Virus record (IMG/VR): IMGVR_UViG_3300030673_000004
Span: 310,001 to 374,000 of that record
Reading direction: 5' to 3' (one strand)
Length of the DNA stretch: 64,000 nucleotides
Each line of letters starts with the position of its first letter. Position 1 is the first letter of the stretch. The notes beneath the pieces are model-generated. The model did not search any database. It worked only from the letters and a program-made list of their open reading frames with translations, and was not told the DNA's origin. A program made the position numbers and the translations under genes. Positions 3,963 through 38,972 of the stretch are shown piece after piece.

Positions 3963-5579
3963 ATGTCAATCGCAGTGGCCAGAACTTTTTCTGATAGTGA
4001 CGCTTTTTCCAGCGCAAACGACTCACGTATAAAATGCGGGTTTGAGTTGGAGTGTGCCTCTGAATACAGTATAGAGGATTTCCAACAAAAACTATTACAT
4101 GGTGGGTTTGGGTTCACCAACTGGAATGATAGACCAGAAGGTAATCTACGAGCTTCAGACCACTATGGCCATGGGTACTCTAGCCTATGGAATATTGAAA
4201 AAGACGGCTCTATTCCAACAATGGGGCGGTACTCGCATCAAGTAGAGTTCAAATCTCCACCGCTACCCCTAAAAGAAACACTTGACTGGATAGAGAAGCT
4301 CTTTCCATTCATAAGCGAGTTTGCAATAGCGGCAAATAAAACCGCAGGATTTCATACCTCATACAGTATTGAAGGTGTAGATCTATATAGACAAACCAAC
4401 TTCATTAAGCTACTAATGATGCTTGGTGAGCCTCATATAGCAGAAGAGTTAGATCGTGGTGGGAACTACTATGCGGCACAACTTCTAGATGTTATAAAGA
4501 ATAAAATACAAGAGAACTATAAATCTCGTATGTCCGAAGCTGCAAAGGCTCAGTACTTTAGAGATTTATTAGATAACAACATACGATGGGATTCATATTT
4601 CTCAACAACTGAGAGATATTTTTCTATTAATCTACTACACGCACGTGATAACTATGTGGAATTTCGTCTTCTTGGTGGAAAAGACTACTTAAAAAAAGTA
4701 CCGCAAATCAAGCGCATGATAGCTCGGTTTGCCTATGCACTTAAAGTAGCTACCGATCCCAGAGCGTACAGAGATGAGTATTCAGCACTACTGTACACTA
4801 TGCTGCACGGTGAAGATGAAGACACGTCTATACAGTATTCAGAGCTACGCTGGCGTATAGAAACAGCGCAAAGTAGAATAGTTATATACCATAAAGAATC
4901 AAACAAAGCATATATAGCTCTATTCTATCGCAATAACATACAGGATAAAATCATCTATGACTATACTTGGTTAGATCAAACATTAGCAGAAGCAGATAAA
5001 GAACTAATTCGTAGGCGGGTAACATCTTTAATTAGCCGCCCAACAGTATGCTCAGGTATAGAATTACCACTCATATATACCAAAGATTTACTAGGCGAGT
5101 TCACGTACCAAAAAATAGATCAAATAGCCGCGAATAACCCCGGCACATATGAATGGGCGCTTAAGGCATTTGATTCTTTGGAGGTACTGCCATCACGAGT
5201 GGTAGCGTCTAATATATTACAAAGTGAAAATTACAAAGCAATACGAGAGTTTGTCCGACTAGCACTTCGATCCTCTGAAGATACACTAATACGAGCTCTT
5301 ACACATAAGATACTAAATGATCCTGAATTATACAGTCATTTTGTCAATACTCATGGCGAACTCATAGATAGAGAAAGTTACTGGGAACACTTAGGTGTAA
5401 CACAGTATCAAAAATTCGCACCGTTTGAGCATGAACTTCTTAACAGATTCAAAGACTCTGACGATCTAGGTCTAGAAGACTTGGGCACCCAAGAGATTGA
5501 GGATGTTCATTTTGAGCCCACCACCGCCCCAGTAAGAAGGAGGCGCAGGAGGCATACTCCCGATGAGGCGGAAGACTAA
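3963..5579 (+). CDS. Putative amidoligase (COOH-NH2 ligase, glutamine-synthetase-like fold)
   Basis: Motifs GFELE, W.I..DGSI, VEFKSP, TAGFHTS, RYFSINL and VEFRLLGG match the phage amidoligase pattern. The C-terminal ~250 aa are unassigned. Confidence 0.8.
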   Translation: MSIAVARTFSDSDAFSSANDSRIKCGFELECASEYSIEDFQQKLLHGGFGFTNWNDRPEGNLRASDHYGHGYSSLWNIEKDGSIPTMGRYSHQVEFKSPPLPLKETLDWIEKLFPFISEFAIAANKTAGFHTSYSIEGVDLYRQTNFIKLLMMLGEPHIAEELDRGGNYYAAQLLDVIKNKIQENYKSRMSEAAKAQYFRDLLDNNIRWDSYFSTTERYFSINLLHARDNYVEFRLLGGKDYLKKVPQIKRMIARFAYALKVATDPRAYRDEYSALLYTMLHGEDEDTSIQYSELRWRIETAQSRIVIYHKESNKAYIALFYRNNIQDKIIYDYTWLDQTLAEADKELIRRRVTSLISRPTVCSGIELPLIYTKDLLGEFTYQKIDQIAANNPGTYEWALKAFDSLEVLPSRVVASNILQSENYKAIREFVRLALRSSEDTLIRALTHKILNDPELYSHFVNTHGELIDRESYWEHLGVTQYQKFAPFEHELLNRFKDSDDLGLEDLGTQEIEDVHFEPTTAPVRRRRRRHTPDEAED

Positions 5580-6970
5580 TGAGTTCAAGCGAAATTCAAA
5601 ATAGGTTAGTAAAGTACATAGCAAATTTGGATCCTGACGCGGACACTGTACAAGGTCCTATCTATGATCTAATGCTACAACCCATACCATCAGAAATTGA
5701 CCTAGCAGCTACTAACGCGGCACAGCTTCTTTCTCTATATGGAAGAATTAATAATGCGTCTCAACTAACTACAGACGAACTAGAAGCTGTTGGGTTGAAC
5801 TTACGGGTATCCCGTGTTGCTGGATCTAAAGCTACCGTTGACCTTAAATTTGTGCTCTCAAGCAAGCCAACGACAACAGTATCTATCCCAACAGGTACAG
5901 CAGTAGCGACATCTGATTATAAATATGTATTTGTAACCAATTATGGTGTAACAATCACACCAGCAGCCGCATATGCCTTCTACAATAATACAACAGGTAA
6001 ATACGAAGCCTATGTTTCAGCTACTGCGCAAAACGTAGGATCCGGATATAACTTACCACTAAACAAAATAACAACATTAGTAAGTTCCCTGACCAGTGTG
6101 CAAACAGTCACCAATACAGTAGCAGCTTCTGGTGGAACAGATGCCAGTGATAATCTCTCATATTACACTAGAGTTCAAACAGCACTCAACGGTATGGACC
6201 CATCAAGCCTATCCGCATACTTTAATGCAATTTCACGAGATACTACATATCGAGATTACACATTATTTGTATCAGCAGCAGACAGAACAAAGTTCAAACG
6301 TCGCATGGTAGGGAATGCCTTTGATGTGTATTTAGGAACACCTAGCTATGCTACATATGTAGACGAATTTACATATACAAGCGGTGCTCAAGTATTTACG
6401 CTCGGAACTGGCCCTGTATATGCTGTTCAATATGTTACAGTCAATAGCGAAGTCCTGAGTACAGATTATTGGAAACTTTCCCTGGATACAAGTGTAGAAT
6501 ATACCAAGTCAACCGCAGGAAACAACACAGTTACATTAACAAATACACTAGCATCTAATGATACAGTAAGCATATATTACACTGTTAATAAAAACTGCCT
6601 AGATGTGCAAACAGCACTAAATACATTAAATCCGCAAAATGTAACATTTCTAGTTCGAGAAATGACAAAAGTACCTGTACAAATAGCTATCTCATTAGTT
6701 GCCACACAAGTAACATCATCTACGATAGACTCAGTTACAACACTTGTATCTAGTTTGTGCAATGACCAACAAACAGACACACTTACAGTATACGATGTCC
6801 AAAACGTAATAACAGCAGCACTACCCTCCATAAGATTAGCCACAATTACCAAACTACGAAGAAGCGCTAATTCTGCAGGGGATGCTATTCAAAATATCAG
6901 TTTAGCCTTCAATGAGATGCTAAGTCTAGATGTAGATAATGGCGATCTTGTAATTACGGCATCAACCTAA
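5579..6970 (+). CDS. Baseplate J-like wedge protein
   Basis: R..GSKATV.L.F...IPTGT.VAT...F.T...V.ATA..VGSGYN...ITTL...VTN..AASGGTD..D..Y..R is the typical baseplate J pattern. Confidence 0.8.
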   Translation: MSSSEIQNRLVKYIANLDPDADTVQGPIYDLMLQPIPSEIDLAATNAAQLLSLYGRINNASQLTTDELEAVGLNLRVSRVAGSKATVDLKFVLSSKPTTTVSIPTGTAVATSDYKYVFVTNYGVTITPAAAYAFYNNTTGKYEAYVSATAQNVGSGYNLPLNKITTLVSSLTSVQTVTNTVAASGGTDASDNLSYYTRVQTALNGMDPSSLSAYFNAISRDTTYRDYTLFVSAADRTKFKRRMVGNAFDVYLGTPSYATYVDEFTYTSGAQVFTLGTGPVYAVQYVTVNSEVLSTDYWKLSLDTSVEYTKSTAGNNTVTLTNTLASNDTVSIYYTVNKNCLDVQTALNTLNPQNVTFLVREMTKVPVQIAISLVATQVTSSTIDSVTTLVSSLCNDQQTDTLTVYDVQNVITAALPSIRLATITKLRRSANSAGDAIQNISLAFNEMLSLDVDNGDLVITAST

Positions 6971-10419: not shown

Positions 10420-13400
10420 ATGACAATGAAGGCTGTTTTCTCCTATTCGAATCCCGATGCTACCACAGATATGAATGCACACTTCCGCATTCTATTTAAG
10501 AAGGGTATTGTATCTGGTGGATTAATTACACCTGTTGGTGGAACATACCAAGTTACAGTCAGCGCCTTCACTGCAGTCTCTTACGATGGCATGGTTGTAG
10601 AACAGGATGCTGCAACTACATTAACCATACCGAGCAGCACTAAAGGGACAACGTATTATGTAGTCCTGGTTGCTCAATACAATGCACCAGCATCGCCAAC
10701 ACTACAATTACAGGTAATGTCCAGCACGACATATGCAGCAAGTCCTACAGACTACTTCATTATTCTCGGCAGTGTTACATTAGCCTCAACCAGTACGTCA
10801 GTACTAAATAACAATATCTCTTACGTAGCTAGAGATGTTACCACTAAAGTTGGGTATCTAAACATTCAGGGAAGCATTTCCATGAATGATACGCCACCTA
10901 ATACAGGGAATCGCTCTGGTGACCTCTATGTAATCTATGATAGCACACCACCATACTTCATTGTATGGAACGGAGCAGAGTGGACAAAGTTCACGGACTA
11001 TTCGAGCCTCGCTGAAGAGTATGAAGTTCACGTAACGGATAATGGTGACTTCACAGGCACAACAGCAATGACCGATGCTAGACATGTCACCAAATCAATT
11101 AAGGCAGCATTGGTTGGTACGACAGGTACACCAAGTGCAACTAATCTGTTTGTTACTCAGACAGATACCGCACTGCTCAGCCCGGATGAGCAAGCAGCAC
11201 TGAGCAACGCTGTTGGCGGAACACTAACAGCAAGTAACCCGGTCGTTGCCAAAAACTTAGCAACACTTGAAGAGCGTGTTGTTGCATACACAGCATCGGT
11301 TGGGGGCCAGACATCAGCACAGATTGCGGCTACAATCAGTGGCTCAATCGTATCTGTATTTGTTGGCACACGTGGGATTGAATCTGATCTCAGCGGTAAC
11401 AGCGTCTCTACAGCACGACAGTTCTTTCGAGTAGAGGACGCTTTTGGAAAAGGTCTTGTATTAAACAGTGTAGCTACCTACATCACAGATGTGACAATGA
11501 ATAGCTCCTCATTTGATACACAAGGAGCCGCTAACGTAGGAGAATCTGGCTTTTGGGATGGAACAGGAACACTGAGTGTTAAATTCAACACAACCATTCC
11601 GGCAGGTACCGTATTTTATGTCAGATACAATATTCAAGGAACAATAGCATCACTGTCTCCGGCCAATAGAGCCACAGGTGCTAGTGGCCGGTATGCCATA
11701 CCAGCAACGGGATATCGTAATGACATAAACTCCTATATTGAATCCTACTCAATACAGACAAACACAATAACAACGACAGCAATTAATATAAAAGGGCAAT
11801 CTTTCGCAGCCAAAGGAACACCGAGCGCCCCAAGTTATACTTTTACAGCAGACAATACGACAGGATTTTTCTACGTAGGAACAACAACAGAGAACCACCT
11901 AACAGATTATCAAGGGTTAGGTTTTGCTATTGGTGGTCAAACACTACTAGTAATGGGAAAAGCGACAGCTACTTTGGATATGAGTGGTGCCTACCATATG
12001 CTAGAGGCAGATGTAGATACTAATGGCTATCCATACCACAAATGGGCGCTCGTAACTTCAACTGCTGGGGGTTCCGGAACAACAGGCTCCTTCATGTTTG
12101 GGACAGCCAACTACTTGTCTGATTTTACACCGGCATTTGGAATCCTATGGCAGCCCTCTAGGGCACAAACATTTAATAAGTCTCAACCTTATGTAAGCAT
12201 TCAACGAGATGTTGCTATTGAAGCTCTCGGATCAACAGACACATACCAACTAAGTGTTATGGGCGGTACTGCAAGTGCCCCAGGTATCACATTTAACCGA
12301 AGTCAGAGCGGATTTTACTACTTTGATGATATGGGTGATGCTAAACACTCCCTGTACAAGGGTATTGCCGTAGCCATTAACGGATCTCCTTTAGTTGTTA
12401 TGGGTAACAACAGTGCCTCCATATCAGGATCTGCCTATGCCACTCAGTACCTCATGATTGAAAAGAGTGACAACAGTGATGTTCGTTTAGGTATGTTTGG
12501 ATATCAAACAGCAGGAGCACTGAGATTAGGATACTCGTACTATCTAGATGATTGGGTTGATCAAATTGTTCTCGGTGACGACATTCGTGTATATGATGAT
12601 TTAGTTTCTACCCGAAACATAACATGTACGACAGTAACTAGTACCACAGCCACAAGAGCACCTATGCACATCGCAACAACCGATGGTACTACGAGTGCGC
12701 CTGCGTACAGCTTTGCCAGTAACCCTAGCTGGGGTATGTATTTAGCAGGAAGTATTCAAAATAGTGATCTATACTTAGGTACAAGACTTACGCTAGCTGT
12801 TAACGGATACGATCATTTAGCACTAGGACGAGATACTTGGCTAGGCTATTCAAGTGCGCCTATTGCCCCTCTAGAGATAAATTCCTACGCACAAGGGTCT
12901 AATGCTGAATTTGGTTACAACATAGCAATACCATTTACAGTCAGCAATGGGGGCACACATAAAATAAAATTCGGTACCTCTTACTACAACAGTGATTTTG
13001 ATGAAGAATTTACTCTGATTACTTACGGAAGTGGTGCATCATCCGAGTTGCATGCATACTGTCAATTCCACATCGAGTCAGGATCTTCCTTCTACATGCA
13101 CACAGGAGTAGGTACAGGACATGATGATCTTATCTCAAGGGTTGACTGCTTGTACTCCACACCCCTCAATGATAGGTATTTCACAGTTAATAGCTGCATG
13201 TCTGTTAGCAACGGGCTATACGTAACAGCCTTTGGCACAACAACAGCAGCTCAATTAGTTCTTGGGTCAGGAACTATGAATACTACATGGACAAGAGCTA
13301 ACAGTACTACAGTTAAGGATTGGTTTCAAACAAAGGTTAATAATCTTTCAAGTATACTAGATGTAAGTGGTGCTTGGAATGGAACATCAACGGGCACCCC

Positions 13401-13512
13401 GTCGCTGAGCAGTGTAGCGACAGCTTTGCAGAATTTAATTGCTATGCTTGGATATAATACTACAAATGCGGCAGAGAGTACATTACACACCTTGTTCACA
13501 TACACACACTGA
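10420..13512 (+). CDS. Tail fibre / baseplate-anchored fibre protein
   Basis: Thr/Ser/Gly-rich, with a baseplate-anchor-like N-terminus and three G-T-x-S-A-P-x-(Y/I)-(T/S)-F repeats typical of phage fibres. Confidence 0.65.
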   Translation: MTMKAVFSYSNPDATTDMNAHFRILFKKGIVSGGLITPVGGTYQVTVSAFTAVSYDGMVVEQDAATTLTIPSSTKGTTYYVVLVAQYNAPASPTLQLQVMSSTTYAASPTDYFIILGSVTLASTSTSVLNNNISYVARDVTTKVGYLNIQGSISMNDTPPNTGNRSGDLYVIYDSTPPYFIVWNGAEWTKFTDYSSLAEEYEVHVTDNGDFTGTTAMTDARHVTKSIKAALVGTTGTPSATNLFVTQTDTALLSPDEQAALSNAVGGTLTASNPVVAKNLATLEERVVAYTASVGGQTSAQIAATISGSIVSVFVGTRGIESDLSGNSVSTARQFFRVEDAFGKGLVLNSVATYITDVTMNSSSFDTQGAANVGESGFWDGTGTLSVKFNTTIPAGTVFYVRYNIQGTIASLSPANRATGASGRYAIPATGYRNDINSYIESYSIQTNTITTTAINIKGQSFAAKGTPSAPSYTFTADNTTGFFYVGTTTENHLTDYQGLGFAIGGQTLLVMGKATATLDMSGAYHMLEADVDTNGYPYHKWALVTSTAGGSGTTGSFMFGTANYLSDFTPAFGILWQPSRAQTFNKSQPYVSIQRDVAIEALGSTDTYQLSVMGGTASAPGITFNRSQSGFYYFDDMGDAKHSLYKGIAVAINGSPLVVMGNNSASISGSAYATQYLMIEKSDNSDVRLGMFGYQTAGALRLGYSYYLDDWVDQIVLGDDIRVYDDLVSTRNITCTTVTSTTATRAPMHIATTDGTTSAPAYSFASNPSWGMYLAGSIQNSDLYLGTRLTLAVNGYDHLALGRDTWLGYSSAPIAPLEINSYAQGSNAEFGYNIAIPFTVSNGGTHKIKFGTSYYNSDFDEEFTLITYGSGASSELHAYCQFHIESGSSFYMHTGVGTGHDDLISRVDCLYSTPLNDRYFTVNSCMSVSNGLYVTAFGTTTAAQLVLGSGTMNTTWTRANSTTVKDWFQTKVNNLSSILDVSGAWNGTSTGTPSLSSVATALQNLIAMLGYNTTNAAESTLHTLFTYTH

Positions 13513-13528: not shown

Positions 13529-13569
13529 ATAAACAAAAAAAGAGCTGTTACGCTCTTTTTTTTGTTTAT
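13529..13569. terminator. Bidirectional intrinsic terminator
   Basis: ataaac-A7-gagc, loop tgttac, gctc-T8-gtttat. Near-perfect inverted repeat with A and T tracts. Confidence 0.8.
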
Positions 13570-13602: not shown

Positions 13603-15780
13603 ATGATAGCATTAATTATATTGGTACATAATCAAAGCCAGTACCTATTAGACTTAGAGCAGGCGCTGCTACAACAGACGCGACAGCCAGATAAGATAGT
13701 TTTTGTGGTTGATCGGTGCTTGGCCGATTTCCAAGCAGCAACAAGCATAGCAGAAAAACACACAAACTGGTTAGCGCTTCATGTTAACCTGGACCAACTA
13801 GAGACCAGTTCCTGCTTAATAGGTAAATCCAGAGATGCAGCACTTAAACTTGTACCAGACTACAATGTAATATTTACAGACGCCGATTGTACACCAAGCC
13901 CACGCTTGATTGAGCATCACGCAAAATACTTAGAGAACGATTCTGAAATTATTGCTACTGCAGGTGTACGCATATCAATTAATCAGGATGGATCTCAAAG
14001 CGGTGACATCAGATTAACAGAGATGCCGTTTAGAAGAACATCCTTTAATCCAGATGTCGATAGAATAGCTTTAAGTGAGCAAGCTGACAACCCTATGGTT
14101 TTATTTGGATGTAATTTTGGATTAAACCTAAGAGCAATAGAGTGTATAAAACAAATACATAAAAATATCTTTAATGAAGATAGAGTATTTTCATCCGTGT
14201 TTGACTCAGCTTGGGGATATGAAGAATCATCTCTAGGACCGTTACTATATAATCAGGGGGGGAAACTAATACTGCTAGCGACAGAACAAAGTAACGTCAC
14301 GCACCACTGGCACAACAGTCGCAAAACAGATACACAAGCAAGAACAGCAAGTCAGTATATAAACAAAACCTGCTTATGTCCTGTAACAATAACTAAAAAT
14401 AGCTATAATTGCTATAACGCAGTCAGTAACTTACCGCAATGGCTAACGAGTATACTTAAAGAATACACACAAAGAGAACAAGCTGAAATTGCAGACTGCT
14501 TATATCAGCGTGCTACAAAAGTAGCAGGTACGGAAAAAACAGACCCAAATAACATAAATAAGGTTACCCAGTTCTTAAACAAGCATCGTTTCTATGTTGA
14601 AGTGCCTAATGATGGTACACAAATAGAAAAGACCGAATCTTGCCGTGTCCTACCGAAAACAGCATATACAAGCTGTGACGCAACTGTTGTGCTACCTATG
14701 CACAACCAGGAAAACAATGTTGACCGTATCCTCACAGCGCTAAGCCAACAATCAAAACTACCAAAAGAACTAATCATAGTTGCCGATAGATGCACCGATG
14801 GAACAACAGCTAAAATTAGAAATATCCAAAGTACACTACCATTTGAAACAACACTACGAATACGGTGTCCTACGGAAGAGGGCTTCAGAGCAGGCCAGGT
14901 TAGAAATGACGGAATAGATCAAGCAAAAGCTACCAACATTCTTATGCTAGATGGTGACTGCGTGCCTGCACCACGGTGGGTTGAAGCGCACATGGACATT
15001 CTAGAAAAAGCAACTGTACCCTGTGCTACATTTGGAATACGACACGACCAGATAGAGGAAGCATCACCCAATACTCGTTCGGACACACGCACATACCGAA
15101 CAACAATACCTATTTTTGCAAGAACAGAAGCAAGAGTAACCACGTTCAAAGGTGTGATCTATGGGGGCATGGGTACATGGTCGTGTAACCTAGGATTAAA
15201 TAAAGCAGCGGTAATGTTACTGAAGCAATTGAATAATGGCTCAGTATTCTCAAACCAATTAACACAAGGTGTCTGGGGTGGTGAAGATACATACCTAGGA
15301 ATGCAGCTCTGGGATAATTGGGCAATGTGTGTAGCAACAAACCCAGAAAAAGGCAGCGTATATCATATCTGGCATAGCCGATACTCAGGTAAAGTCGGTA
15401 CAGATCATATGCTTAGACTAAAGCATAGCCAGATCCCAACAATGTTTTATAGAAATAAAACACGACTAACAAACATTGCAGACACTGAAATACAACTACT
15501 TGCAACACACACTATAAAAGATCTACCTGGTGTATATAAACTATACATAGACAATGCACTTAAATATAGCCCAGATGAAGTAACGACACAAAAAGCATTA
15601 GCGTACTACTTAGCGAGAACAGTCGTGTTTGAAGAATGTCCAAAGGGTACTCAAGAACAGCTACAGACAGATGCCATGTATAAAGAACTCTGTCGCATTC
15701 GCGATCTAGTTGCAATGACTAAAATTGATATGCTAGACTACCAAGAAGCCCTCAAGGATAAAATAACACTACAATTTTAG
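13603..15780 (+). CDS. Tandem two-domain GT2 (GT-A fold) glycosyltransferase
   Basis: Two copies of (I/V)(I/V)L.HNQ...L.AL.QQ...P...I.V.DRC...R+...D(A/G)DC.P...H...CN.GLN...WG.E(E/D)..LG...V.H.WH, with DxD motifs DADC (~13880) and DGDC (~14950). Confidence 0.85.
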   Translation: MIALIILVHNQSQYLLDLEQALLQQTRQPDKIVFVVDRCLADFQAATSIAEKHTNWLALHVNLDQLETSSCLIGKSRDAALKLVPDYNVIFTDADCTPSPRLIEHHAKYLENDSEIIATAGVRISINQDGSQSGDIRLTEMPFRRTSFNPDVDRIALSEQADNPMVLFGCNFGLNLRAIECIKQIHKNIFNEDRVFSSVFDSAWGYEESSLGPLLYNQGGKLILLATEQSNVTHHWHNSRKTDTQARTASQYINKTCLCPVTITKNSYNCYNAVSNLPQWLTSILKEYTQREQAEIADCLYQRATKVAGTEKTDPNNINKVTQFLNKHRFYVEVPNDGTQIEKTESCRVLPKTAYTSCDATVVLPMHNQENNVDRILTALSQQSKLPKELIIVADRCTDGTTAKIRNIQSTLPFETTLRIRCPTEEGFRAGQVRNDGIDQAKATNILMLDGDCVPAPRWVEAHMDILEKATVPCATFGIRHDQIEEASPNTRSDTRTYRTTIPIFARTEARVTTFKGVIYGGMGTWSCNLGLNKAAVMLLKQLNNGSVFSNQLTQGVWGGEDTYLGMQLWDNWAMCVATNPEKGSVYHIWHSRYSGKVGTDHMLRLKHSQIPTMFYRNKTRLTNIADTEIQLLATHTIKDLPGVYKLYIDNALKYSPDEVTTQKALAYYLARTVVFEECPKGTQEQLQTDAMYKELCRIRDLVAMTKIDMLDYQEALKDKITLQF

Positions 15781-15804: not shown

Positions 15805-16287
15805 ATGGAACAAGAAAAAGAAGCTATACTGCAAACGAGCATTGAAGTATCTACTACATGTGATTTGTGGCTAGACAGTCTTGCTCTAATCTATCACACA
15901 TACTACTGTGCTCATGTTGGTCATTGGAACATCAAGGGAGAATCATTCTCAGCTTGGCATAAGTTCCTGAATGACGCTTATGAATTCTGGCATGATCTAG
16001 CCGATACTGTAGCAGAACATATCCGGGCCACGTTCAAAGAAGACATCCCCAATAATTTCCAAGTACTCCTTCGTAGGATACAAGGTGACCCAACAGCAGA
16101 CATAGAGCCCGATGGGCTAGGCTACTTCCAGGCTCTTTTAGTCTACCAGGAAGCGGCTGCTACTGTATTTGATATGCTCGCGAAGAAAGCAGATGCTGAA
16201 AGTGACCAAGCATCCTTAGATCTTGCAGCATCGACACTCCGCGAGATCAAAAAGTATATCTGGCAAACACGAAGCCACTTGGACTAA
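15805..16287 (+). CDS. dps: Dps / ferritin-like DNA protection protein
   Basis: HWNIKGESFSAWHKFLNDAY...ADTVAEHI matches the Dps ferroxidase signature HWN..G..F...H...E.Y...D..AER. Confidence 0.8.
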   Translation: MEQEKEAILQTSIEVSTTCDLWLDSLALIYHTYYCAHVGHWNIKGESFSAWHKFLNDAYEFWHDLADTVAEHIRATFKEDIPNNFQVLLRRIQGDPTADIEPDGLGYFQALLVYQEAAATVFDMLAKKADAESDQASLDLAASTLREIKKYIWQTRSHLD

Positions 16288-16295: not shown

Positions 16296-16703
16296 ATGTC
16301 GTCAGATATGCTAAAGAATACACTACGCATAGGACACAAGGCAGTAGCCTCGCGTGTATCCATTATGGAATTAACACAGTCGTTAACAGACCGAGGTATT
16401 CGCCATATTATTGCTCCCGATGGATCTGTCTTAGTCCCAAAAGGAACTAAAACAAATGAAGATCTATCGTCTAAGGTACAAGAAATAATAAAAATACTCC
16501 AACGAGACCCAAGTAATTCAATGAAAGTAGCCATTGAATTAAACACCAATGTGCCAGATAACAAAAGAACAGTAACAATTAAGAATAACTCTATGATAGA
16601 GGGATCCTGGATTCTTACCACCAAGGAACTCGCGGAGTTGTTCGATCACAAGGACTACTTCCCTGTAGAACTTCAACTCACAACCGAGGAAACATCAGAA
16701 TGA
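16296..16703 (+). CDS. Hypothetical protein; N-terminal motif shared with the next gene
   Basis: LTQSLTDRGIRHIIAPDGSVLV resembles MTQALAARGHESIITASGEILI of 16700..17362. Confidence 0.7.
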   Translation: MSSDMLKNTLRIGHKAVASRVSIMELTQSLTDRGIRHIIAPDGSVLVPKGTKTNEDLSSKVQEIIKILQRDPSNSMKVAIELNTNVPDNKRTVTIKNNSMIEGSWILTTKELAELFDHKDYFPVELQLTTEETSE

Positions 16704-17362
16704 ACACAGAAAACGTAACTAAGATGACACAGGCTCTTGCTGCACGTGGCCACGAGAGCATCATTACAGCCTCAGGTGAGATCCTGATTGCAACGTCTAA
16801 GGCGAAGTTGCACGCGGCTGAAAAGGTACGTACTATTCTTCCATCAACAGCAAAGTTTGATGGTGAAAAGTGGGCTACCACATACGAAGGCCAGTACATC
16901 ACAGATCCGGCAGAATTGGCTCGGTTGCGTGAAGAAGCTAAGTCCAATGAAGAGACAGCTTTGCGCTTGGGCAAGATCTCCGGTAAGGGTGATAAGCAAG
17001 AAGCCTTTCTAAAGTCCGGCCCTGTTGTTGAACTGGATAAAAAAGCTATTTCTGAGTACATGAAGGGTCTGGACAAGACAACTAAGGCTCGCAAGGATCA
17101 GGCTACACAACCAGAAAAGCCTAAGGCACCGGCAGTAAAGCAGAATGAAGGCGAAGCTGGCAAGAAGACTGAAAAGACTGTTGCTAAGCGTAAGACTGCT
17201 TCTGTAAAAACAGAAGAGAGTGAAGCTGGCAAGAAGACCGAGTCTATTGTAGCCAAGCGCAAAAATGCTAAAGCTGATGAAGGCAAGAACTTCCAACAAG
17301 AAGCTCCTAAGCCAGCAGCAGTACCGAAGACAGGTAATGGATCTAAGCCTGCTAAAAAGTAA
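16700..17362 (+). CDS. Hypothetical protein with a Lys/Ala/Glu-rich repeated C-terminus
   Basis: Duplicated EAGKKTE..VAKRK.A unit. Followed by a strong terminator. Confidence 0.75.
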   Translation: MNTENVTKMTQALAARGHESIITASGEILIATSKAKLHAAEKVRTILPSTAKFDGEKWATTYEGQYITDPAELARLREEAKSNEETALRLGKISGKGDKQEAFLKSGPVVELDKKAISEYMKGLDKTTKARKDQATQPEKPKAPAVKQNEGEAGKKTEKTVAKRKTASVKTEESEAGKKTESIVAKRKNAKADEGKNFQQEAPKPAAVPKTGNGSKPAKK

Positions 17363-17385: not shown

Positions 17386-17426
17386 AGATTAGGCCAGGGT
17401 AATACTATCCTGGCCTAATCTCTTTT
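17386..17426 (+). terminator. Intrinsic terminator
   Basis: Perfect 13-bp stem agattaggccagg / cctggcctaatct followed by cttttt. Confidence 0.85.
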
Positions 17427-17437
17427 TAAGGAAACAT

Positions 17438-17764: not shown

Positions 17765-20700
17765 ATGGCGAACTTACAAACATATTATGTAGATCTCTCT
17801 TTAAGCAATTCTGTTGTTGGGGAAGGCACAGCAACAAATAAATACTCATGGGGAGATGTACTACGTTGGTTCGCTACTCTAAATGCGTCACCGTTTGATA
17901 CACCGAACGCTCTTGATGAGGGCATTCCCTTTGATATGACAGGTGTGAGTGTTGAATTTAGAATGACAGGCAAAAAGACAATGCTAGTAACTGATGTACT
18001 AGCATTGTCTAATCTTGAATTCTTCTTAGATGCATTCATTCGTTTCACAAGCGATGATCCTGCTACCAACGGTGTACCTGTCTGGCAGTTCGCGTCAAAC
18101 ACAACACTAGATACGTTCATATCTCTAACTCTAGGCTCCGCAGCCAACATTAAGATACAGGGTGTCTTTCTTGACATAGAAGGCTCCGTAGGAACCTTAA
18201 TATCCAATACTAGTGACAACGGAAAAACAACACTAGAGAACAACATAATCGTAGCTCGAAATAAGACCACAGTAATAAACTCAACAGCTACTTATGGTGC
18301 AATAACATTCGCAGGGAATACCGTTCTCGTTGGATCTATCGCAAGTGGTCAGCATGTTCTTGTTTCTAGTACAGGAGCTAATACATCAATTGCCGTATCC
18401 CACAACATTGTAGGACAACACGTAGACTCAGGCTCAGCCATGGTTGCCTTCTCAGCAGACAGCACAAACACAATCACAGCATCTGGAAATGTCTGGGCAA
18501 TCAGAGCGAATGGTAGTGCCTACACAGGCGTGTACCCAAGTGCAGGCAATGGTGCCCCAGATGTATTTGGACAAGTTCTAACCGATGTAGTCTACGGGGA
18601 TACAACCCTAGGTGGAACTACGGTAGACTTCACAACAATCTTAAATACTGACACGGATATGGCACGAGGTTGTTCTGAATTTACTATGGGATTCGCTAGA
18701 GCAAATCCCGCAGGACCGGCAACACAAATAATGTCAAGCCAAGCGGTTACAGTAACAGCTACAGATGCTGTAGGCTATCTAGACATTAATGGCAAATACC
18801 GTTCCAGTACTATTGATGCCGGAGCTATCCAAAAGAGTGGCCTGACAACAGCGAGCACAACTCATGTGGATTTAGGTTTGAGTGCTACTCGCTCAAATCG
18901 CATAGGAACAGTTGATGATCCAATCACGCGAACAGACTGGCTATTAGATTTAGTCCAGAGAGCCCCTGTAGATAACGAAATACAGTATGCTATTCGTGGC
19001 AGCATGGCTTCTGGATCAGCAACCCTTGATATCATACTTGGTACAGGATCCAACTATACAGGATCTGGGACTATTAACATAATAGGTTGGAAGACCTTTA
19101 ATAGAACATTACCTAAACTACGAATCAATTCTGTCTACTGGAATCAGACTATCAATACAACATTCCAAAAGATACAAGTGGAGTGGACAGGCACACAAGA
19201 TCTATTAACATGTCCTGCATCAGGATTAAATGCGAATGCTACAACATGCTCGCTACTTAATCTAACAGTACGAAGCAACGTAGCAAACACGGGTAGATTC
19301 CTTGCGCTACCTACAACCAGCCCTATTGTACAATTGGGTGGTGTTAGCGCGGCATTTAAGCACACAAGTGCAACAACGCAAGCTAAAGGTTATATAGCTA
19401 TTGATTCAGACCTGGCTCATAGTGTTACGCTATCAGCATTTGAACTAGCAAACCAAACAGCGCTAATGACTGTTCCGGCGCAAACAAGTGTGATCGGTAT
19501 CTATGCGCACACACCGGCAGGAACTGCGGTCGTAACAGGACCAACCGCAACATTTGCCACATTGAATGGTATAGAACCTTTTAATGATACAACGTCAGAT
19601 ACTGCGGACTTCACGCTGGTATCAACAACAAGCGCTGTTGGTATCTTAGCAGATTCCACATATCTACCAACTTCAGTGAAAACATATCTCGTGCGGGACT
19701 GTCGAGATCTAGAACGCTCAGCATACCCCTATGGCACAACAGCGCTAGATGCTGGAGCATATGAGTATGGATATAAGATATACCCGGAAATCCATCTCTA
19801 TGCAGATCTAAGCAAGACCTCTACAGGACACATCGGAACCATCATTGATAAATTCTCGTATGCTGATTTAGTAGCTTGGATTGCTACGGCAAAGACAGCA
19901 ACACTAACAAAAAAATATATTGTTCATTTGCTTCGTAGCCTAGAAGCAGACACAACAATCTTAGATTTATCAAACATTGAAGGTAACCCGTACACGGGTA
20001 GCATCACGTTTGTCACTGATAATGGTAAAAGTGCAGCAACACTCATTAGTGCGCAAGCACCTGCAGTTACAGCATATAACACACAGGGATTGAATCTTGA
20101 GTTAAACAAGATAATTCTTGGCAGTTCCTCTGGATATGGGCCTATTGCACTATCAGGAGAGAGCACCACAAAAAATACACTAACAGTTGATAACTCTATC
20201 TTAAGTTGGATTCATAGCCAAGTTGGATTCATCGTATCTCGAACAGGTACGCTATCAGGCACAGATAGTATAACAGTCAACACAGTAGTATTTGCACAAA
20301 CACAAACAACATCAGATAGTGGTAAAGATTTTGACGCGCTACTAGCTTCTATACAAAACGACAGCACCATCGGTGATCTGGTGATTGTAACAGAAGTTAC
20401 ACAAGGAACAACATACCGCATATCACCAGCCACATCTGTTGACATCACAGTAAATACGTCAACGAACATAACAAATGCACGCTGTGTTAGCCTAATTGAT
20501 GGAGATACCAATTGGACCGCACGCATTGGTGCCTGTAGCATAGCAGATAGCTTCACTAAAGACTTATCAATCCAAACAAATGTGGTAGGCTCAACACCTG
20601 TAGATTTTGCTGCAACTGCAATACAAAGTGTTGCTAGCGGAACGTCACATCTGGGAACTATCGCTACAACTGTAAACAATGTCTATGGGCTCGTCTACTC

Positions 20701-21826
20701 AGCAGCGGCTACTCTAGGTACAGTTTCTGGCACAACGATAAATGCCAAAACTACATCTAATGCGATCTTTGCTAATGCAGCAGATGCAGATTTCAGTGAA
20801 GATTCATTTAAGTTAACAGGCAATGTAGACTCTCTGAGTATCCTAAACGGTTCCCAATTACCTGCATGGGCAAGTACACTAAACGTTGACATGGTTGGCG
20901 CTCTACGCTTCTCTACGACTTCTGAAGCAATGGATGCGGGTGCTATTGAATACAATGGAATAGCATCTACAGGTACTTATGACTCAGACACGTCATCACC
21001 TGTTGTAACCAGAACAAATCTGGGCCAGGTCGCCTTCATGCGTGCTGAGACAGAAGGGCCTCTCTCTGTATTAAACCCATATACATCGGGTACCCGTTCG
21101 GTTAATCCTTTTGCGTACAAGATTGTTGGCTACCAACTACTAAATGCTGGTTATGTCTATTGGCAACCGACGCAACCAACAGATATTCAAGACTTCTCAG
21201 GAACACAAGCATCGGCTACTATTACAATTGCTAATGGTAACTCTTTTGATGCAACAACCCGTATTTCTGTTACCTATTTAGGACACACCTGCGCACTAAC
21301 ATATACAGCGGCCACTGGCAGCACAGGGATATTCGCTGCGGGCGCTACAGCTAGTGATACAGCACAAAATATAGCAAGTCTCCTGAGAAGCACAAGCGTT
21401 GCAGGGATACCCTTAGAATCTGTACTATGGGTATCTGTAGCAGCTAATGTAATTACGCTAACAGCCAAGTTACTGGGATCCTACGGAAATCTAATAACGG
21501 TTACAACAACAGGAATAGGTGTAAACAATACGGTGATGGCTAATGGTACTGATGCTACGACACCAAGTAGTTTGGTTTATCCTGCCAACGGGTGGATAGC
21601 TTTTGATAAAACAGAGATACCGGATCCCTACTCAGTGAGTTTCTTGCTGAAATTAGGAGTAAGTGATGCTAATGTTGCCTTTGGCGCCATCGTCGTCATG
21701 GCTGAAATTATCTCATCCCCACTACCATCTGAAGTAGGAACAGTAATTCCTTTTGCTATAGCACGCATGCCGCTAGAATCAAAACACGAAAGAAAAACCA
21801 TCTCTTGTAGGGTGCTGTTCACTTAA
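17765..21826 (+). CDS. Large virion protein with three putative beta-helix modules and a C-terminal tail-collar-like domain
   Basis: Three modules start with (Y/H)(V/A)DL and end with DAGA(I/Y)(Q/E). The C-terminus resembles 9986..10408. Confidence 0.6.
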   Translation: MANLQTYYVDLSLSNSVVGEGTATNKYSWGDVLRWFATLNASPFDTPNALDEGIPFDMTGVSVEFRMTGKKTMLVTDVLALSNLEFFLDAFIRFTSDDPATNGVPVWQFASNTTLDTFISLTLGSAANIKIQGVFLDIEGSVGTLISNTSDNGKTTLENNIIVARNKTTVINSTATYGAITFAGNTVLVGSIASGQHVLVSSTGANTSIAVSHNIVGQHVDSGSAMVAFSADSTNTITASGNVWAIRANGSAYTGVYPSAGNGAPDVFGQVLTDVVYGDTTLGGTTVDFTTILNTDTDMARGCSEFTMGFARANPAGPATQIMSSQAVTVTATDAVGYLDINGKYRSSTIDAGAIQKSGLTTASTTHVDLGLSATRSNRIGTVDDPITRTDWLLDLVQRAPVDNEIQYAIRGSMASGSATLDIILGTGSNYTGSGTINIIGWKTFNRTLPKLRINSVYWNQTINTTFQKIQVEWTGTQDLLTCPASGLNANATTCSLLNLTVRSNVANTGRFLALPTTSPIVQLGGVSAAFKHTSATTQAKGYIAIDSDLAHSVTLSAFELANQTALMTVPAQTSVIGIYAHTPAGTAVVTGPTATFATLNGIEPFNDTTSDTADFTLVSTTSAVGILADSTYLPTSVKTYLVRDCRDLERSAYPYGTTALDAGAYEYGYKIYPEIHLYADLSKTSTGHIGTIIDKFSYADLVAWIATAKTATLTKKYIVHLLRSLEADTTILDLSNIEGNPYTGSITFVTDNGKSAATLISAQAPAVTAYNTQGLNLELNKIILGSSSGYGPIALSGESTTKNTLTVDNSILSWIHSQVGFIVSRTGTLSGTDSITVNTVVFAQTQTTSDSGKDFDALLASIQNDSTIGDLVIVTEVTQGTTYRISPATSVDITVNTSTNITNARCVSLIDGDTNWTARIGACSIADSFTKDLSIQTNVVGSTPVDFAATAIQSVASGTSHLGTIATTVNNVYGLVYSAAATLGTVSGTTINAKTTSNAIFANAADADFSEDSFKLTGNVDSLSILNGSQLPAWASTLNVDMVGALRFSTTSEAMDAGAIEYNGIASTGTYDSDTSSPVVTRTNLGQVAFMRAETEGPLSVLNPYTSGTRSVNPFAYKIVGYQLLNAGYVYWQPTQPTDIQDFSGTQASATITIANGNSFDATTRISVTYLGHTCALTYTAATGSTGIFAAGATASDTAQNIASLLRSTSVAGIPLESVLWVSVAANVITLTAKLLGSYGNLITVTTTGIGVNNTVMANGTDATTPSSLVYPANGWIAFDKTEIPDPYSVSFLLKLGVSDANVAFGAIVVMAEIISSPLPSEVGTVIPFAIARMPLESKHERKTISCRVLFT

Positions 21827-29448: not shown

Positions 29449-29458
29449 AGGTGACACA

Positions 29459-32068: not shown

Positions 32069-32076
32069 GAGACATC

Positions 32077-32361: not shown

Positions 32362-32379
32362 AAGTCTTTGACATACAGA

Positions 32380-32418: not shown

Positions 32419-32457
32419 AGTACCATCCTATGCAAGAACCTTTTATTAGAGGTCGGT

Positions 32458-33138: not shown

Positions 33139-33149
33139 AAGGAATCCGC

Positions 33150-38960: not shown

Positions 38961-38972
38961 TAAAAATCAAAT

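What the first reader, a model, noticed from the sequence alone, without database searches (positions are those of the whole stretch)
13603..15780. Internally duplicated two-active-site GT2 inserted among virion genes: candidate virion glycosylation or polysaccharide synthase
Seen: two complete GT-A domains, each with a DxD motif and followed by a similar helical segment, isolated by a bidirectional terminator upstream. The neighbouring virion proteins are very Thr/Ser-rich. Established: two-domain GT2 enzymes such as Pasteurella hyaluronan synthase and E. coli K4 chondroitin polymerase build alternating glycans, and mycobacteriophage glycosyltransferases glycosylate virion proteins. Inference: this enzyme may build a disaccharide-repeat glycan on the fibres or remodel the host surface.
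Basis: partly seen in the sequence, partly recalled or inferred. Interest (0 to 1): 0.6.

Follow-up and report, generated by a model that had tools for sequence, protein, structure and literature searches.

The report
Two-headed glycosyltransferase in phage fibre module
A 375-kb uncultured peat/freshwater phage carries a sugar-adding enzyme with two intact active sites at a fixed position among its baseplate and fibre genes, and related phages fill that position with other sugar-tailoring enzyme combinations, so the phage probably decorates its own tail fibres with sugars (inferred, not shown).

Summary
ORF 13603-15780 (+) encodes a 725-aa soluble protein with two homologous GT-A/GT2 catalytic cores (27% identity; hhalign E 8e-31). 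Both cores keep the family's invariant DxD and WG(G/Y)E(D/E) motifs. The upstream terminator hairpin is real and holds its position in relatives. The "similar helical tails" are not supported. The neighbours' Ser/Thr richness is diffuse, not mucin-like.

The gene is not a recent insert. It fills a conserved slot (large fibre-like protein / enzyme / Dps-like protein) downstream of Baseplate_J. Orthologous slots in related phages hold GT, GT-GT, GT-GT-methyltransferase or GT-methyltransferase-radical-SAM proteins. The enzyme belongs to a mainly viral GT2 clade. In that clade, every context examined lies in a baseplate or giant-fibre gene cluster. A sister clade of short enzymes mostly lies elsewhere, one group beside DNA-metabolism genes.

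The closest solved structure is the A1 domain of E. coli K4 chondroitin polymerase (Z 21.8). Both cores are A1-like, so it is not a K4CP/PmHAS orthologue. The genome showed no thymidylate-synthase-like, NDP-sugar epimerase or nucleotidyltransferase gene.

Best reading (about 0.45): a cytoplasmic enzyme adding two sugars in turn to virion fibre proteins. Host-surface remodelling is the main rival. Nothing was tested biochemically.

The parts
13535..13562 (+). Intrinsic-terminator-like hairpin (A-tract, 11-bp stem, 6-nt loop, T-tract) between the upstream fibre-like gene and the GT gene
   Evidence: Consensus scan finds it on both strands. RNAfold gives -17.3 kcal/mol for the intergenic stretch. 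GC-rich hairpins plus U-tracts lie at the same position in L002, L004, L005 and L006.
13603..15780 (+). Gene for the 725-aa tandem GT2-GT2 glycosyltransferase (P0001); soluble, no transmembrane segment
   Evidence: ORF and translation. Pfam PF00535 matches twice. Maximum 19-residue Kyte-Doolittle hydropathy is 1.27. Freshwater metagenome contigs are mostly at least 95% alike (a few under 90%), with no indel listed inside the ORF and 11 synonymous against 8 non-synonymous differences among the 19 listed.
13603..14337 (+). Catalytic core 1 (residues 1-245), GT-A fold
   Evidence: AF2 with the 82-sequence alignment: pLDDT 89.7, pTM 0.86. VIA-align Z 21.8 to K4CP residues 151-417, rmsd 3.0 over 222 residues.
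13879..13887 (+). DxD motif of core 1 (D93-A-D95, within FTDADC)
   Evidence: D93, D95 and C96 are invariant in all 82 sequences of A4. The motif aligns to K4CP's LDCDMAP.
14212..14226 (+). WGYEE motif of core 1 (residues 204-208), counterpart of WGGED
   Evidence: G205 and E207 are invariant, W204 is at least 90% conserved, and position 208 is D in at least 90% of the clade. It is E in this core. E207 and E208 are invariant in the five two-domain proteins aligned in A2.
14335..14526 (+). C-terminal alpha/beta subdomain of unit 1 (residues 245-308)
   Evidence: Secondary structure of the AF2 model, pLDDT 84-96. Some VIA alignments to SpsA and GalNAc-T2 extend to about residue 300.
14533..14667 (+). 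Low-confidence inter-unit linker (residues 311-355)
   Evidence: pLDDT 37-60. The family alignment is poorly conserved here.
14674..15402 (+). Catalytic core 2 (residues 358-600)
   Evidence: Best Pfam stretch at residues 361-500. Homologous to core 1. Best PDB sequence match is the K4CP A1 domain, including its WGGED segment. The fold of its C-terminal half was not modelled confidently.
14950..14958 (+). DxD motif of core 2 (D450-G-D452, within LDGDC)
   Evidence: Invariant in A2 and A3.
15274..15288 (+). WGGED motif of core 2 (residues 558-562)
   Evidence: G559, E561 and D562 are invariant in 79 sequences. The motif aligns to K4CP WGGEDNE and lies in the stretch that matches beta-1,4-galactosyltransferase 1.
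15403..15777 (+). C-terminal tail of unit 2 (residues 601-725), predicted mostly helical at low confidence
   Evidence: Shallow-alignment AF2 model. No significant similarity to tail 1. Three relatives add a CxxC...CxxC extension here.
10420..13512 (+). Upstream 1030-aa fibre-like protein (23.8% S+T, 9.2% Gly); candidate acceptor
   Evidence: Orthologues of 29-47% identity lie directly upstream of the GT slot in L004, L006, L011, L097 and L099. Atlas gives only sub-threshold tail-fibre leads. No Pfam or PDB sequence match; one weak match to an unnamed PHROG.
15805..16287 (+). Dps-family mini-ferritin gene, constant downstream partner of the slot
   Evidence: Pfam Ferritin 46 bits. PDB matches to Dps and HP-NAP, E 9e-9. 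A ferritin-like gene lies next to the GT in every syntenic locus, and those compared are 34-39% identical.
16296..17362 (+). Two small ORFs (135 and 220 aa) of unknown function that complete the terminator-bracketed unit
   Evidence: ORF list. No PHROG or Pfam match. L005 has 127- and 219-aa counterparts by position.
17386..17427 (+). Second strong hairpin plus T-tract, closing the GT / Dps / ORF135 / ORF220 unit
   Evidence: RNAfold -31.2 kcal/mol for 17355-17445. Coordinates were read from the dot-bracket output.
17765..21826 (+). Downstream 1353-aa fibre-like protein (23.9% S+T)
   Evidence: Orthologues of 27-58% identity over the full length in L004, L006 and L011. Atlas leads are at chance level.
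5579..6970 (+). Baseplate_J-like protein, anchoring the module as baseplate/fibre
   Evidence: Pfam PF04865, 53 bits. tblastn to the baseplate wedge subunits of Bacillus phage G and Tunturi_5.
27205..43723 (+). Stretch holding four large proteins (27205-29448, 29459-32068, 35709-38960, 39671-43723) with 4, 1, 6 and 6 CHB_HEX_C_1/Fn3_assoc repeats, plus other ORFs; further candidate acceptors
   Evidence: Pfam. The same domain families flank the single-domain GT relatives in L007 and L010.

Best explanation
The gene encodes a soluble, cytoplasmic, metal-dependent (DxD) glycosyltransferase with two catalytic sites. Both cores are GT-A/GT2 domains of the type found in the A1 domain of K4 chondroitin polymerase, with a beta-4-galactosyltransferase-like WGGED motif, so both are probably inverting enzymes. 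It is a fixed component of a conserved cassette in the baseplate/fibre module of a lineage of large environmental phages: large fibre-like protein, terminator, glycan-tailoring enzyme, Dps-like protein. The most likely mechanism is that, late in infection, the two sites add two sugars in succession from host-made NDP-sugars onto a phage virion protein before or during assembly. Candidate acceptors are the flanking fibre-like proteins, the CHB_HEX_C_1/Fn3_assoc-repeat proteins downstream, and the collagen-like fibres encoded 20-30 kb upstream. Related phages extend the chemistry by fusing methyltransferase and radical-SAM domains to the same enzyme. SHOWN: the architecture, the conserved catalytic motifs, the fold of unit 1, the conserved slot, the clade-wide association with baseplate/fibre genes, and the fusion variants. 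INFERRED: activity, inverting mechanism, donor sugars, and above all the acceptor.
For: Two homologous GT2 cores. D37, D93/D95, E207/E208, H234/H237 in core 1 and D395, D450/D452, E561/D562, H588/H591 in core 2 are invariant across relatives of 40-56% identity. The DxD, D-x-R and WG.E positions are invariant across 79-82 clade members. Unit 1 folds confidently as GT-A (pLDDT 89.7), with Z 21.8 to K4CP A1. There is no transmembrane segment. The slot is conserved: flanking proteins are orthologous in L002-L006, L011, L097 and L099. At that orthologous slot the enzyme is GT (P0019), GT-GT (here), GT-GT-MT (P0010) or GT-MT-radical-SAM (P0028, P0035). In a 126-sequence tree the clade holding both cores (82 rows, SH-aLRT 98) also holds every examined gene that follows gp25 or adjoins giant PKD/Fn3_assoc or Ser/Thr-rich proteins, often with overlapping stop and start codons. 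The sister clade of short enzymes lies mostly elsewhere. Bacterial genomes give only weak matches (28% identity or less), so the clade is mainly viral. GT-GT-MT is the domain order of chlorovirus A064R, which builds capsid glycans (PMC7826918). The conserved terminator upstream fits lower expression of an enzyme than of the structural protein before it.
Against: No glycan, activity or expression has been observed. The phage is uncultured and its host is unknown. The immediate neighbours have no recognisable virion domain. No mucin-like acceptor tracts occur in the fibres. Glycosyltransferases inside tail-fibre clusters of pelagimyophages have been read as host-surface modifiers (PMC7029224). 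Gene position alone cannot separate 'modifies the fibre' from 'is co-regulated with the fibre'. There is no detectable homology to the mycobacteriophage glycosyltransferases (no mycobacteriophage hit). Core 1 has E where at least 90% of the clade has D (position 208).
Confidence: 0.45

Rival explanations
1. Host-envelope remodelling. The enzyme acts at the inner face of the host membrane on lipid-linked O-antigen, capsule, teichoic-acid or S-layer glycan precursors. This changes the cell surface during infection, for superinfection exclusion or to stop progeny adsorbing to debris.
For: Soluble GT2 enzymes of this fold commonly work on such acceptors: the RmlT, TarP/TarS, SpsA and EPS enzyme matches. 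There is a weak PHROG hit to GtrB-like O-antigen conversion. The literature interprets glycosyltransferases in pelagimyophage tail-fibre clusters this way.
Against: There is no transmembrane segment and no GtrA/GtrC-type partner nearby. The gene is a stable syntenic part of the baseplate/fibre module rather than a variable moron. The clade is mainly viral. Clade members are often translationally coupled to giant fibre-like genes. Fusion to methyltransferase and radical-SAM domains points to a self-contained glycan pathway.
Confidence: 0.25
2. Alternating-copolymer polymerase. Like K4CP, PmHAS or PmHS2, the two sites alternate to polymerise a disaccharide-repeat polysaccharide, free or anchored on fibres.
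For: Two GT2 sites lie in one soluble polypeptide. K4CP is the top sequence and structure match, and PmHS2 scores Z 19.4.
Against: Both cores are A1-like. The K4CP A2 domain aligns at only 0.2-12 bits. Similarity is per-domain and generic (15-18% identity; SpsA, RmlT and GalNAc-T2 score within about 2.5 Z units). Orthologous slots hold a single GT (P0019), which cannot make an alternating polymer. The genome showed no match to the SDR epimerase/dehydratase or sugar nucleotidyltransferase families.
Confidence: 0.08
3. DNA hypermodification. The enzyme glycosylates hydroxymethylated bases in phage DNA, as GT-A enzymes of other phages do.
For: Phage GT-A DNA glycosyltransferases exist, and their best PDB match is TarP (bioRxiv 10.1101/2023.12.21.572611). 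A teichoic-acid glycosyltransferase, PDB 5tze (TarS), is the second-best sequence match of core 1. In the sister clade of short relatives, one group sits beside DHFR, an SF1 helicase and another GT2.
Against: The 375-kb genome has no thymidylate-synthase-like hydroxymethylase. Tet_JBP was not found either, but that control was uninformative. The gene lies in the baseplate/fibre module, whereas such pathways are usually clustered with base-modification genes. The DNA-metabolism contexts belong to the other clade.
Confidence: 0.04
4. Glycosylation of a non-virion product. The cassette enzymes (GT, methyltransferase, radical SAM, and amidoligase and GGACT nearby) make a glycosylated small molecule or peptide.
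For: GT-MT-radical-SAM fusions resemble natural-product tailoring. Amidoligase_2 and GGACT domains lie in the same gene string.
Against: No scaffold-forming genes were seen. The enzyme is consistently placed next to giant fibre-like genes in several phage lineages.
Confidence: 0.1
5. Non-catalytic role. One or both GT-A domains are dead and serve as sugar-binding or structural parts of the virion.
For: Core 1 has E208 instead of the D found in at least 90% of the clade. The gene lies among presumed structural genes.
Against: All metal-binding and catalytic-motif positions are strictly conserved in both cores across 40-56% identical relatives. D-to-E keeps the carboxylate.
Confidence: 0.03

Closest known systems
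E. coli K4 chondroitin polymerase K4CP (PDB 2z86/2z87), and the Pasteurella two-domain synthases PmHS2 and PmHAS
   Same: A soluble polypeptide with two GT2 GT-A catalytic sites. The K4CP A1 domain is the best sequence match (profile E 2.5e-18) and the best structure match (Z 21.8, rmsd 3.0 over 222 residues). The DxD and WGGED segments align.
   Different: Both phage cores are A1-like paralogues, with no A2-type domain. Identity is only 15-18%. The gene lies in a phage baseplate/fibre module, not a capsule locus. Orthologous slots can hold a single GT.
Chlorovirus PBCV-1 A064R (GT-GT-methyltransferase) and A111/114R, which build capsid-protein glycans
   Same: Virus-encoded, cytoplasmic, multi-domain glycan-building enzymes. 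The relative P0010, at the orthologous slot, has the same GT-GT-MT domain order.
   Different: These belong to eukaryotic giant viruses. No sequence homology was tested or claimed. Their glycans are N-linked on the major capsid protein. The window's own protein lacks the methyltransferase domain. A separate 412-aa protein with a weak GT2 match and a methyltransferase domain lies 19 kb upstream.
Mycobacteriophage virion glycosylation (Freeman et al. 2023, as cited in PMC12619734)
   Same: Phage-encoded glycosyltransferases that decorate virion proteins; this is the precedent for the proposed function.
   Different: tblastn against 50,697 phage records gave no mycobacteriophage hit. In those phages the glycans sit at the C-termini of the capsid and tail-tube subunits. 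The original paper is not in the held library and could not be read.
Polypeptide GalNAc-transferases (GT27) and beta-1,4-galactosyltransferase 1 (GT7)
   Same: GT-A fold with a Gal/GalNAc-T-type WGGE motif. GalNAc-T2 scores Z 19.3 over 238 residues. Beta4GalT1 matches the C-terminal motif region of the profile.
   Different: The match is at generic fold level. There is no lectin domain. WGGED (with D after E) is the inverting beta4GalT/K4CP form by my recollection, whereas GalNAc-Ts are retaining.
Glycosyltransferases in the host-recognition clusters of pelagimyophages and cyanomyophages
   Same: Glycosyltransferase genes interspersed with tail-fibre genes in large myophages (PMC7029224).
   Different: Those are mostly GT8, lie in hypervariable regions, and are interpreted as LPS modifiers. 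Here the slot is syntenically stable and the enzyme is a distinct, mainly viral GT2 clade.

Membership tests
GT-A fold glycosyltransferase family 2 (Pfam PF00535 / CAZy GT2-like) | Profile match above the curated threshold | tested here: met
   Two stretches, 62.7 and 36.2 bits against a 23.3-bit cut-off.
GT-A fold glycosyltransferase family 2 (Pfam PF00535 / CAZy GT2-like) | DxD metal/nucleotide-sugar binding motif in each domain | tested here: met
   D93-A-D95 and D450-G-D452, invariant across 79-82 clade sequences.
GT-A fold glycosyltransferase family 2 (Pfam PF00535 / CAZy GT2-like) | GT-A three-dimensional fold | tested here: met
   Unit 1: AF2 pLDDT 89.7; Z 20-22 to K4CP A1 and SpsA. Unit 2: by homology only (hhalign E 8e-31); its own model was poor.
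GT-A fold glycosyltransferase family 2 (Pfam PF00535 / CAZy GT2-like) | Sugar-transfer activity | not testable with these tools
   Needs an enzyme assay.
Two-domain glycosaminoglycan polymerases (K4CP / PmHAS / PmHS2) | Two GT2 catalytic domains in one soluble chain | tested here: met
Two-domain glycosaminoglycan polymerases (K4CP / PmHAS / PmHS2) | Two different domain types (A1 HexNAc-transferase plus A2 GlcA-transferase) | tested here: not met
   Both cores match A1. The A2 region aligns at only 0.2-12 bits. The cores are paralogues of each other.
Two-domain glycosaminoglycan polymerases (K4CP / PmHAS / PmHS2) | Capsule-locus context with UDP-sugar supply genes | tested here: not met
   Baseplate/fibre module context. 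The genome has no match to the SDR epimerase/dehydratase or nucleotidyltransferase families. UDP-glucose dehydrogenase was not searched specifically.
Two-domain glycosaminoglycan polymerases (K4CP / PmHAS / PmHS2) | Processive or alternating polymerisation | not testable with these tools
   Needs an in vitro polymerisation assay.
Virus-encoded virion-glycosylating enzymes (mycobacteriophage GTs; chlorovirus A064R type) | Glycan demonstrated on a virion protein and dependent on the gene | not testable with these tools
   Uncultured phage; no proteomic data.
Virus-encoded virion-glycosylating enzymes (mycobacteriophage GTs; chlorovirus A064R type) | Sequence homology to the characterised phage enzymes | tested here: not met
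   tblastn against INPHARED phages gave only two weak, partial, unrelated hits.
Virus-encoded virion-glycosylating enzymes (mycobacteriophage GTs; chlorovirus A064R type) | Multi-domain GT-GT-methyltransferase grammar (A064R) | tested here: inconclusive
   Present in the orthologue P0010 but not in this protein. A methyltransferase domain 27-29% identical to P0010's lies in a separate 412-aa protein upstream.
Phage GT-A DNA glycosyltransferases (5hmC/5hmU hypermodification) | Clustering with 5mYOX/TET, a ThyA-like hydroxymethylase or a C5-methyltransferase | tested here: not met
   No PF00303 match in the genome. No PF12851 match, but that control was silent everywhere. Neighbours are baseplate and fibre-like genes.
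GtrB-like O-antigen conversion glycosyltransferases (phrog_841) | C-terminal transmembrane helices and GtrA/GtrC partners | tested here: not met
   Weak hit only (E 4e-5, N-terminal 100 residues). No hydrophobic segment. No small membrane-protein partner is evident.

The most novel reading that the evidence does not exclude
Large environmental tailed phages carry a modular fibre-glycan tailoring slot in the baseplate/fibre operon. The slot is always paired with a Dps-like gene. Its occupant is shuffled between GT, GT-GT, GT-GT-methyltransferase and GT-methyltransferase-radical-SAM. This lets the phage build and diversify its own glycans, possibly methylated or radical-SAM-modified, on tail fibres or collagen-like whiskers. 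It would be a bacteriophage counterpart of giant-virus fibril and capsid glycosylation, with consequences for host recognition, virion stability or evasion of glycan-blind defences.
Probability: 0.3. Interest if true: 0.8.

Novelty: new variant of a known kind. Interest (0 to 1): 0.6.

Why it matters
Virion glycosylation by phage-encoded enzymes has been described so far for mycobacteriophages, with giant eukaryotic viruses as the other precedent. If this cassette glycosylates tail fibres, self-made glycans would be a widespread feature of large environmental phages. The glycan chemistry would also be an evolvable part of the host-recognition apparatus, changed by domain shuffling at one slot. 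The finding gives concrete, clonable enzyme and candidate-substrate pairs for testing. It also defines a mainly viral GT2 clade, with invariant R, DxDC, D-x-R, WG.E(D/E) and H..H positions, whose sister clade includes a group beside DNA-metabolism genes. That helps future annotation separate possible fibre-associated from possible DNA-associated phage glycosyltransferases.

Tried and rejected
- Megablast of the gene against 50,697 phage records: no match.
- tblastn of the protein against the same records: two weak partial hits.
- tblastn of the Baseplate_J protein: only distant hits to Bacillus phage G and Tunturi_5, so the phage has no cultured relative.
- PHROGs on 18 neighbouring proteins: nothing useful apart from the Dps-like protein.
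- IMG/VR search with the single protein: nothing. The alignment-based search worked.
- AF2 of the whole protein with 5 sequences: poor (pLDDT 57). I did not use it for fold searches.
- A whole-protein alignment with single-domain relatives piled nearly all of them onto core 2, so I modelled unit 1 alone. Unit 2's C-terminal half and tail remain unmodelled.
- Tail-to-tail similarity: rejected.
- In-situ duplication against fusion of two paralogues: undecided. The N and C cores are each monophyletic and not sisters in the ML tree, but the AU test does not reject sisterhood (p 0.44). The mixture-model AU run did not finish.
- Atlas searches on both flanking giants: leads only (scores 0.8-0.89).
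- phmmer against PDB for both flanking giants: nothing.
- No protein domain shared by the GT-adjacent giants of different lineages at BLAST level.
- Radical-SAM domains of the fusion proteins show no BLAST similarity to this genome's own two radical-SAM proteins.
- Mucin-like Ser/Thr tracts: almost none.
- The RNA-library contig over 15472-15738 is not evidence of transcription.
- Freeman et al. 2023 is not in the held library. The moraphage paper shows no evident link to this lineage.
- Complex prediction was not run. An enzyme-substrate contact is not a stable complex, and I make no binding claim.
- No alternative genetic code was needed.


Full report
WHERE THE WINDOW LIES

The window is bases 310,001-374,000 of a 375,537-bp IMG/VR virus record with direct terminal repeats, rated complete. 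It is an uncultured jumbo phage. The same sequence occurs in peat metagenomes, which are the likely source. Mostly near-identical fragments occur in freshwater metagenomes. It has no close relative among 50,697 deposited phage genomes. Almost all long ORFs in the window run on the + strand.

THE OBSERVATION

ORF 13603-15780 (+) encodes 725 residues.

- Pfam Glycos_transf_2 matches twice, above threshold both times.
- The halves are 27% identical over 241 residues (E 1e-20).
- Profile-profile comparison of the family sub-alignments aligns residues 2-239 with 360-593 at E 8e-31.
- Each core has a DxD motif (D93-A-D95; D450-G-D452), a WG(Y/G)E(E/D) motif (residues 204-208; 558-562) and an H..H pair.
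- There is no transmembrane segment.
- The hairpin at 13535-13562, with an A-tract before it and a T-tract after it, is real. Four relatives have a GC-rich hairpin plus U-tract at the same intergenic position, although the sequences differ.
- A second strong hairpin at about 17386-17427 closes a four-gene unit: GT, Dps-like, ORF135, ORF220.

Two parts of the observation do not hold.

- The segments after the cores are not detectably similar. In the confident model, residues 245-308 form an alpha/beta subdomain that some alignments to known GT-A enzymes reach. A disordered linker follows.
- The neighbours' Ser+Thr content (22-28%) is diffuse, as is usual for fibre proteins. Only three short Ser/Thr tracts exist in the whole window.

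ARE BOTH SITES INTACT?

The word-index search found only a handful of two-domain relatives at 40-56% identity. A full HMMER scan of 1.84 billion representatives added one more, P0010, plus fragments. After these, scores fall to E of about 1e-42.

Within the two-domain family the following residues are invariant:

- Core 1: D37, D93, D95, E207, E208, H234, H237.
- Core 2: D395, D450, D452, E561, D562, H588, H591.

In 79- and 82-sequence alignments of the wider clade, R77, D93, D95, C96, D135, R137, G205 and E207 and their core-2 counterparts are invariant. The one deviation is E208 in core 1, where at least 90% of the clade has D. This keeps the carboxylate and is fixed in the five two-domain proteins aligned. 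Among the 19 listed population variants from freshwater samples there is no indel in the ORF, and 11 are synonymous against 8 non-synonymous. I conclude that both sites are probably active. This is an inference.

FOLD AND NEAREST KNOWN ENZYMES

With the 82-sequence alignment, unit 1 folds at pLDDT 89.7 and pTM 0.86.

- Foldseek and VIA-align put the A1 domain of E. coli K4 chondroitin polymerase first (E 4e-10; Z 21.8, rmsd 3.0 over 222 residues).
- SpsA, RmlT, PmHS2 and polypeptide GalNAc-T2 follow within about 2.5 Z units.
- Sequence profiles agree. K4CP A1 scores E 2.5e-18 with its WGGEDNE segment aligned, and beta-1,4-galactosyltransferase 1 matches the C-terminal motif region.

By my recollection, WGGED with an acidic residue after E is the inverting beta4GalT/K4CP form. 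That is a lead, not a test.

Both phage cores resemble A1, and nothing resembles K4CP's A2 domain. The protein works like a two-site transferase, but it is not a member of the glycosaminoglycan-polymerase family.

THE CONSERVED SLOT (main new result)

The gene order here is: Baseplate_J (5579-6967), 548-aa protein, four small ORFs, 1030-aa fibre-like protein, terminator, GT-GT, Dps-like protein, two small ORFs, 105-aa ORF, 1353-aa protein.

The same order recurs in nine related loci: L002-L006, L011 and L097-L099. The flanking proteins compared there are orthologous:

- the upstream giant is 29-47% identical;
- the Dps-like protein is 34-39% identical;
- the downstream giant is 27-58% identical.

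What varies is the enzyme in the slot:

| Occupant | Protein | Loci |
|---|---|---|
| single GT, 380 aa | P0019 | L011 |
| GT-GT | this protein and P0002, P0005, P0006 | window, L002-L005 |
| GT-GT-methyltransferase, 980 aa | P0010 | L006 |
| GT-methyltransferase-radical-SAM, 863-886 aa | P0028, P0035 | L097-L099 |

Other clade members are GT-MT (P0029, P0042) or GT-radical-SAM (P0015). The gene is therefore not a recent insertion. It is one state of a stable, modular glycan-tailoring position.

THE CLADE AND ITS CONTEXTS

An alignment-based scan of IMG/VR with one peptide pattern found 47 loci, on contigs up to 422 kb. In bacterial and archaeal genomes the best matches are much weaker (28% identity or less, E 7e-14 or worse) and are mostly on MAG contigs. 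The clade is therefore mainly viral.

A tree of 126 catalytic cores splits, with SH-aLRT 98, into two clades.

- The clade containing both cores of this protein (82 rows) also holds every gene that I found directly after baseplate wedge gp25 (nine genes). It also holds four of the five genes found next to giant proteins of 1,200-2,250 aa, two of which (L007, L010) carry PKD and Fn3_assoc/CHB_HEX_C_1 domains. Stop and start codons often overlap there.
- The other clade (44 rows) holds short, roughly 280-300-aa enzymes. One group sits beside DHFR, an SF1 helicase and another GT2. Another sits beside a TnsA-like nuclease. One member follows a giant protein.

The window itself encodes four large proteins with 4, 1, 6 and 6 CHB_HEX_C_1/Fn3_assoc repeats downstream. 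These are the same domain families that flank the single-GT relatives in other phage lineages.

Whether the tandem arose by duplication in place or by fusion of paralogues is undecided. The N and C cores are each monophyletic and not sisters in the best tree, but an AU test does not reject sisterhood (p 0.44).

MECHANISM

The best-supported reading is a late-expressed cytoplasmic enzyme that uses host NDP-sugars. The genome showed no match to the SDR epimerase/dehydratase or sugar nucleotidyltransferase families. The enzyme would add two sugars in succession to a virion protein.

The conserved terminator upstream fits read-through or separate lower-level expression of an enzyme after an abundant structural gene. 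The GT-GT-MT orthologue has the same domain order as chlorovirus A064R. That enzyme adds two rhamnoses and methylates the second on the capsid glycan (PMC7826918).

A separate 412-aa protein with a weak GT2 match and a methyltransferase domain lies about 19 kb upstream in this genome. Its methyltransferase domain is 27-35% identical to those of the fusion proteins. Two radical-SAM proteins and three collagen-like proteins lie nearby.

The acceptor is the weakest link, for three reasons:

- the immediate neighbours lack any recognisable domain;
- no domain shared by GT-adjacent giants of different lineages was found at BLAST level;
- nothing has been measured.

RIVALS

- Host-envelope remodelling is the main alternative. 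It is the published reading for glycosyltransferases in pelagimyophage fibre clusters. Against it are the syntenic stability, the mainly viral distribution and the translational coupling to fibre genes.
- An alternating polymerase is unlikely, because both cores are of one type and some orthologous slots hold a single GT.
- DNA glycosylation by GT-A enzymes is real in other phages. Here there is no ThyA-like gene, the Tet_JBP search was uninformative, and the DNA-metabolism contexts belong to the other clade.

NOVELTY AND VERDICT

Phage virion glycosylation and multi-domain viral glycosyltransferases are known kinds. What I could not find described in the literature searches is three things together: a tandem of two A1-like cores, a conserved fibre / enzyme / Dps slot, and the shuffling of that slot among GT, GT-GT, GT-GT-MT and GT-MT-radical-SAM.

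I rate it a new variant of a known kind, with interest 0.6. Confidence is 0.45 for the fibre-glycosylation reading. I would put about 0.85 on the narrower claim that this is an active two-site glycosyltransferase.

- Read laying received 2,901 bases.
- Only the standard bacterial code was used.
- The large representative search was used because the word search left only five relatives and the claim of a narrow, mainly viral family rests on it.

Noticed in passing
L015:961-13010 (genome 290,961-303,013, upstream of the window): Three collagen-repeat proteins lie in a row. One is 714 aa. One is 2004 aa with about 1,584 residues of G-X-Y triplets (Y position: Gln 304, Thr 141). One is 974 aa and combines a GH8 glycoside hydrolase domain with collagen repeats. 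G-X-Thr triplets recall the glycosylated collagen-like BclA of Bacillus exosporium (from memory), so these are further candidate glycosylation targets.
   Followed up: partly
L015:3130-4032, 13683-14918, 16277-18102: A patatin-like phospholipase, a 412-aa protein with a weak GT2 match plus a SAM methyltransferase domain, and two radical-SAM proteins lie between the collagen-like genes and the window. The methyltransferase domain resembles those fused to the slot enzyme in relatives (E 1e-6 to 3e-9).
   Followed up: partly
window 886-3930 and 3963-5579: A 1014-aa protein carries a gamma-glutamyl cyclotransferase (GGACT) domain and a 27-residue Ser/Thr tract (residues 638-664). An Amidoligase_2 protein follows, directly upstream of Baseplate_J. 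In relatives a 304-337-aa GGACT protein sits right after the Dps-like gene. Peptide-ligation or peptide-trimming enzymes inside a baseplate module are unexplained.
   Followed up: no
window 15805-16287: A Dps-family mini-ferritin (PDB matches to Dps and HP-NAP, E 9e-9) is the constant downstream neighbour of the slot enzyme in every syntenic phage locus examined. Its role in a baseplate/fibre operon is unexplained.
   Followed up: partly
P0004, P0005, P0006 C-termini (L004:5734-8040, L002:2306-4606): Three two-domain relatives carry a C-terminal extension of about 40 residues with a CxxC...CPMC pattern (zinc-ribbon-like). The window's protein lacks it.
   Followed up: no
L031, L033-L035, L038-L041, L045, L050, L054, L062: In a sister clade, short 280-aa enzymes sit in large phage contigs (up to 422 kb) directly after a DHFR-domain protein, an SF1 helicase and another GT2. 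They are candidates for a nucleotide- or DNA-directed role.
   Followed up: partly
window 27205-43723: Four large proteins carry tandem CHB_HEX_C_1/Fn3_assoc repeats. One also has BNR/Asp-box and Kelch-like matches, and another DUF4394 and beta-propeller matches. This looks like an unusually large battery of putative adhesin or fibre proteins.
   Followed up: partly
window 49449-55064: An 1871-aa protein with SNF2-related and Helicase_C domains follows the fibre-like genes on the same strand.
   Followed up: no
window 15472-15738: A 267-nt contig from a metatranscriptomic library labelled 'mosquito metagenome' matches with one mismatch. This shows the sequence is present in an RNA library, not that it is transcribed.
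   Followed up: no
L016 and L026 (IMGVR_UViG_3300010352_000284, 80 kb): One viral contig carries two clade members about 20 kb apart: one after gp25 (395 aa) and one after a 1873-aa protein (304 aa).
   Followed up: no
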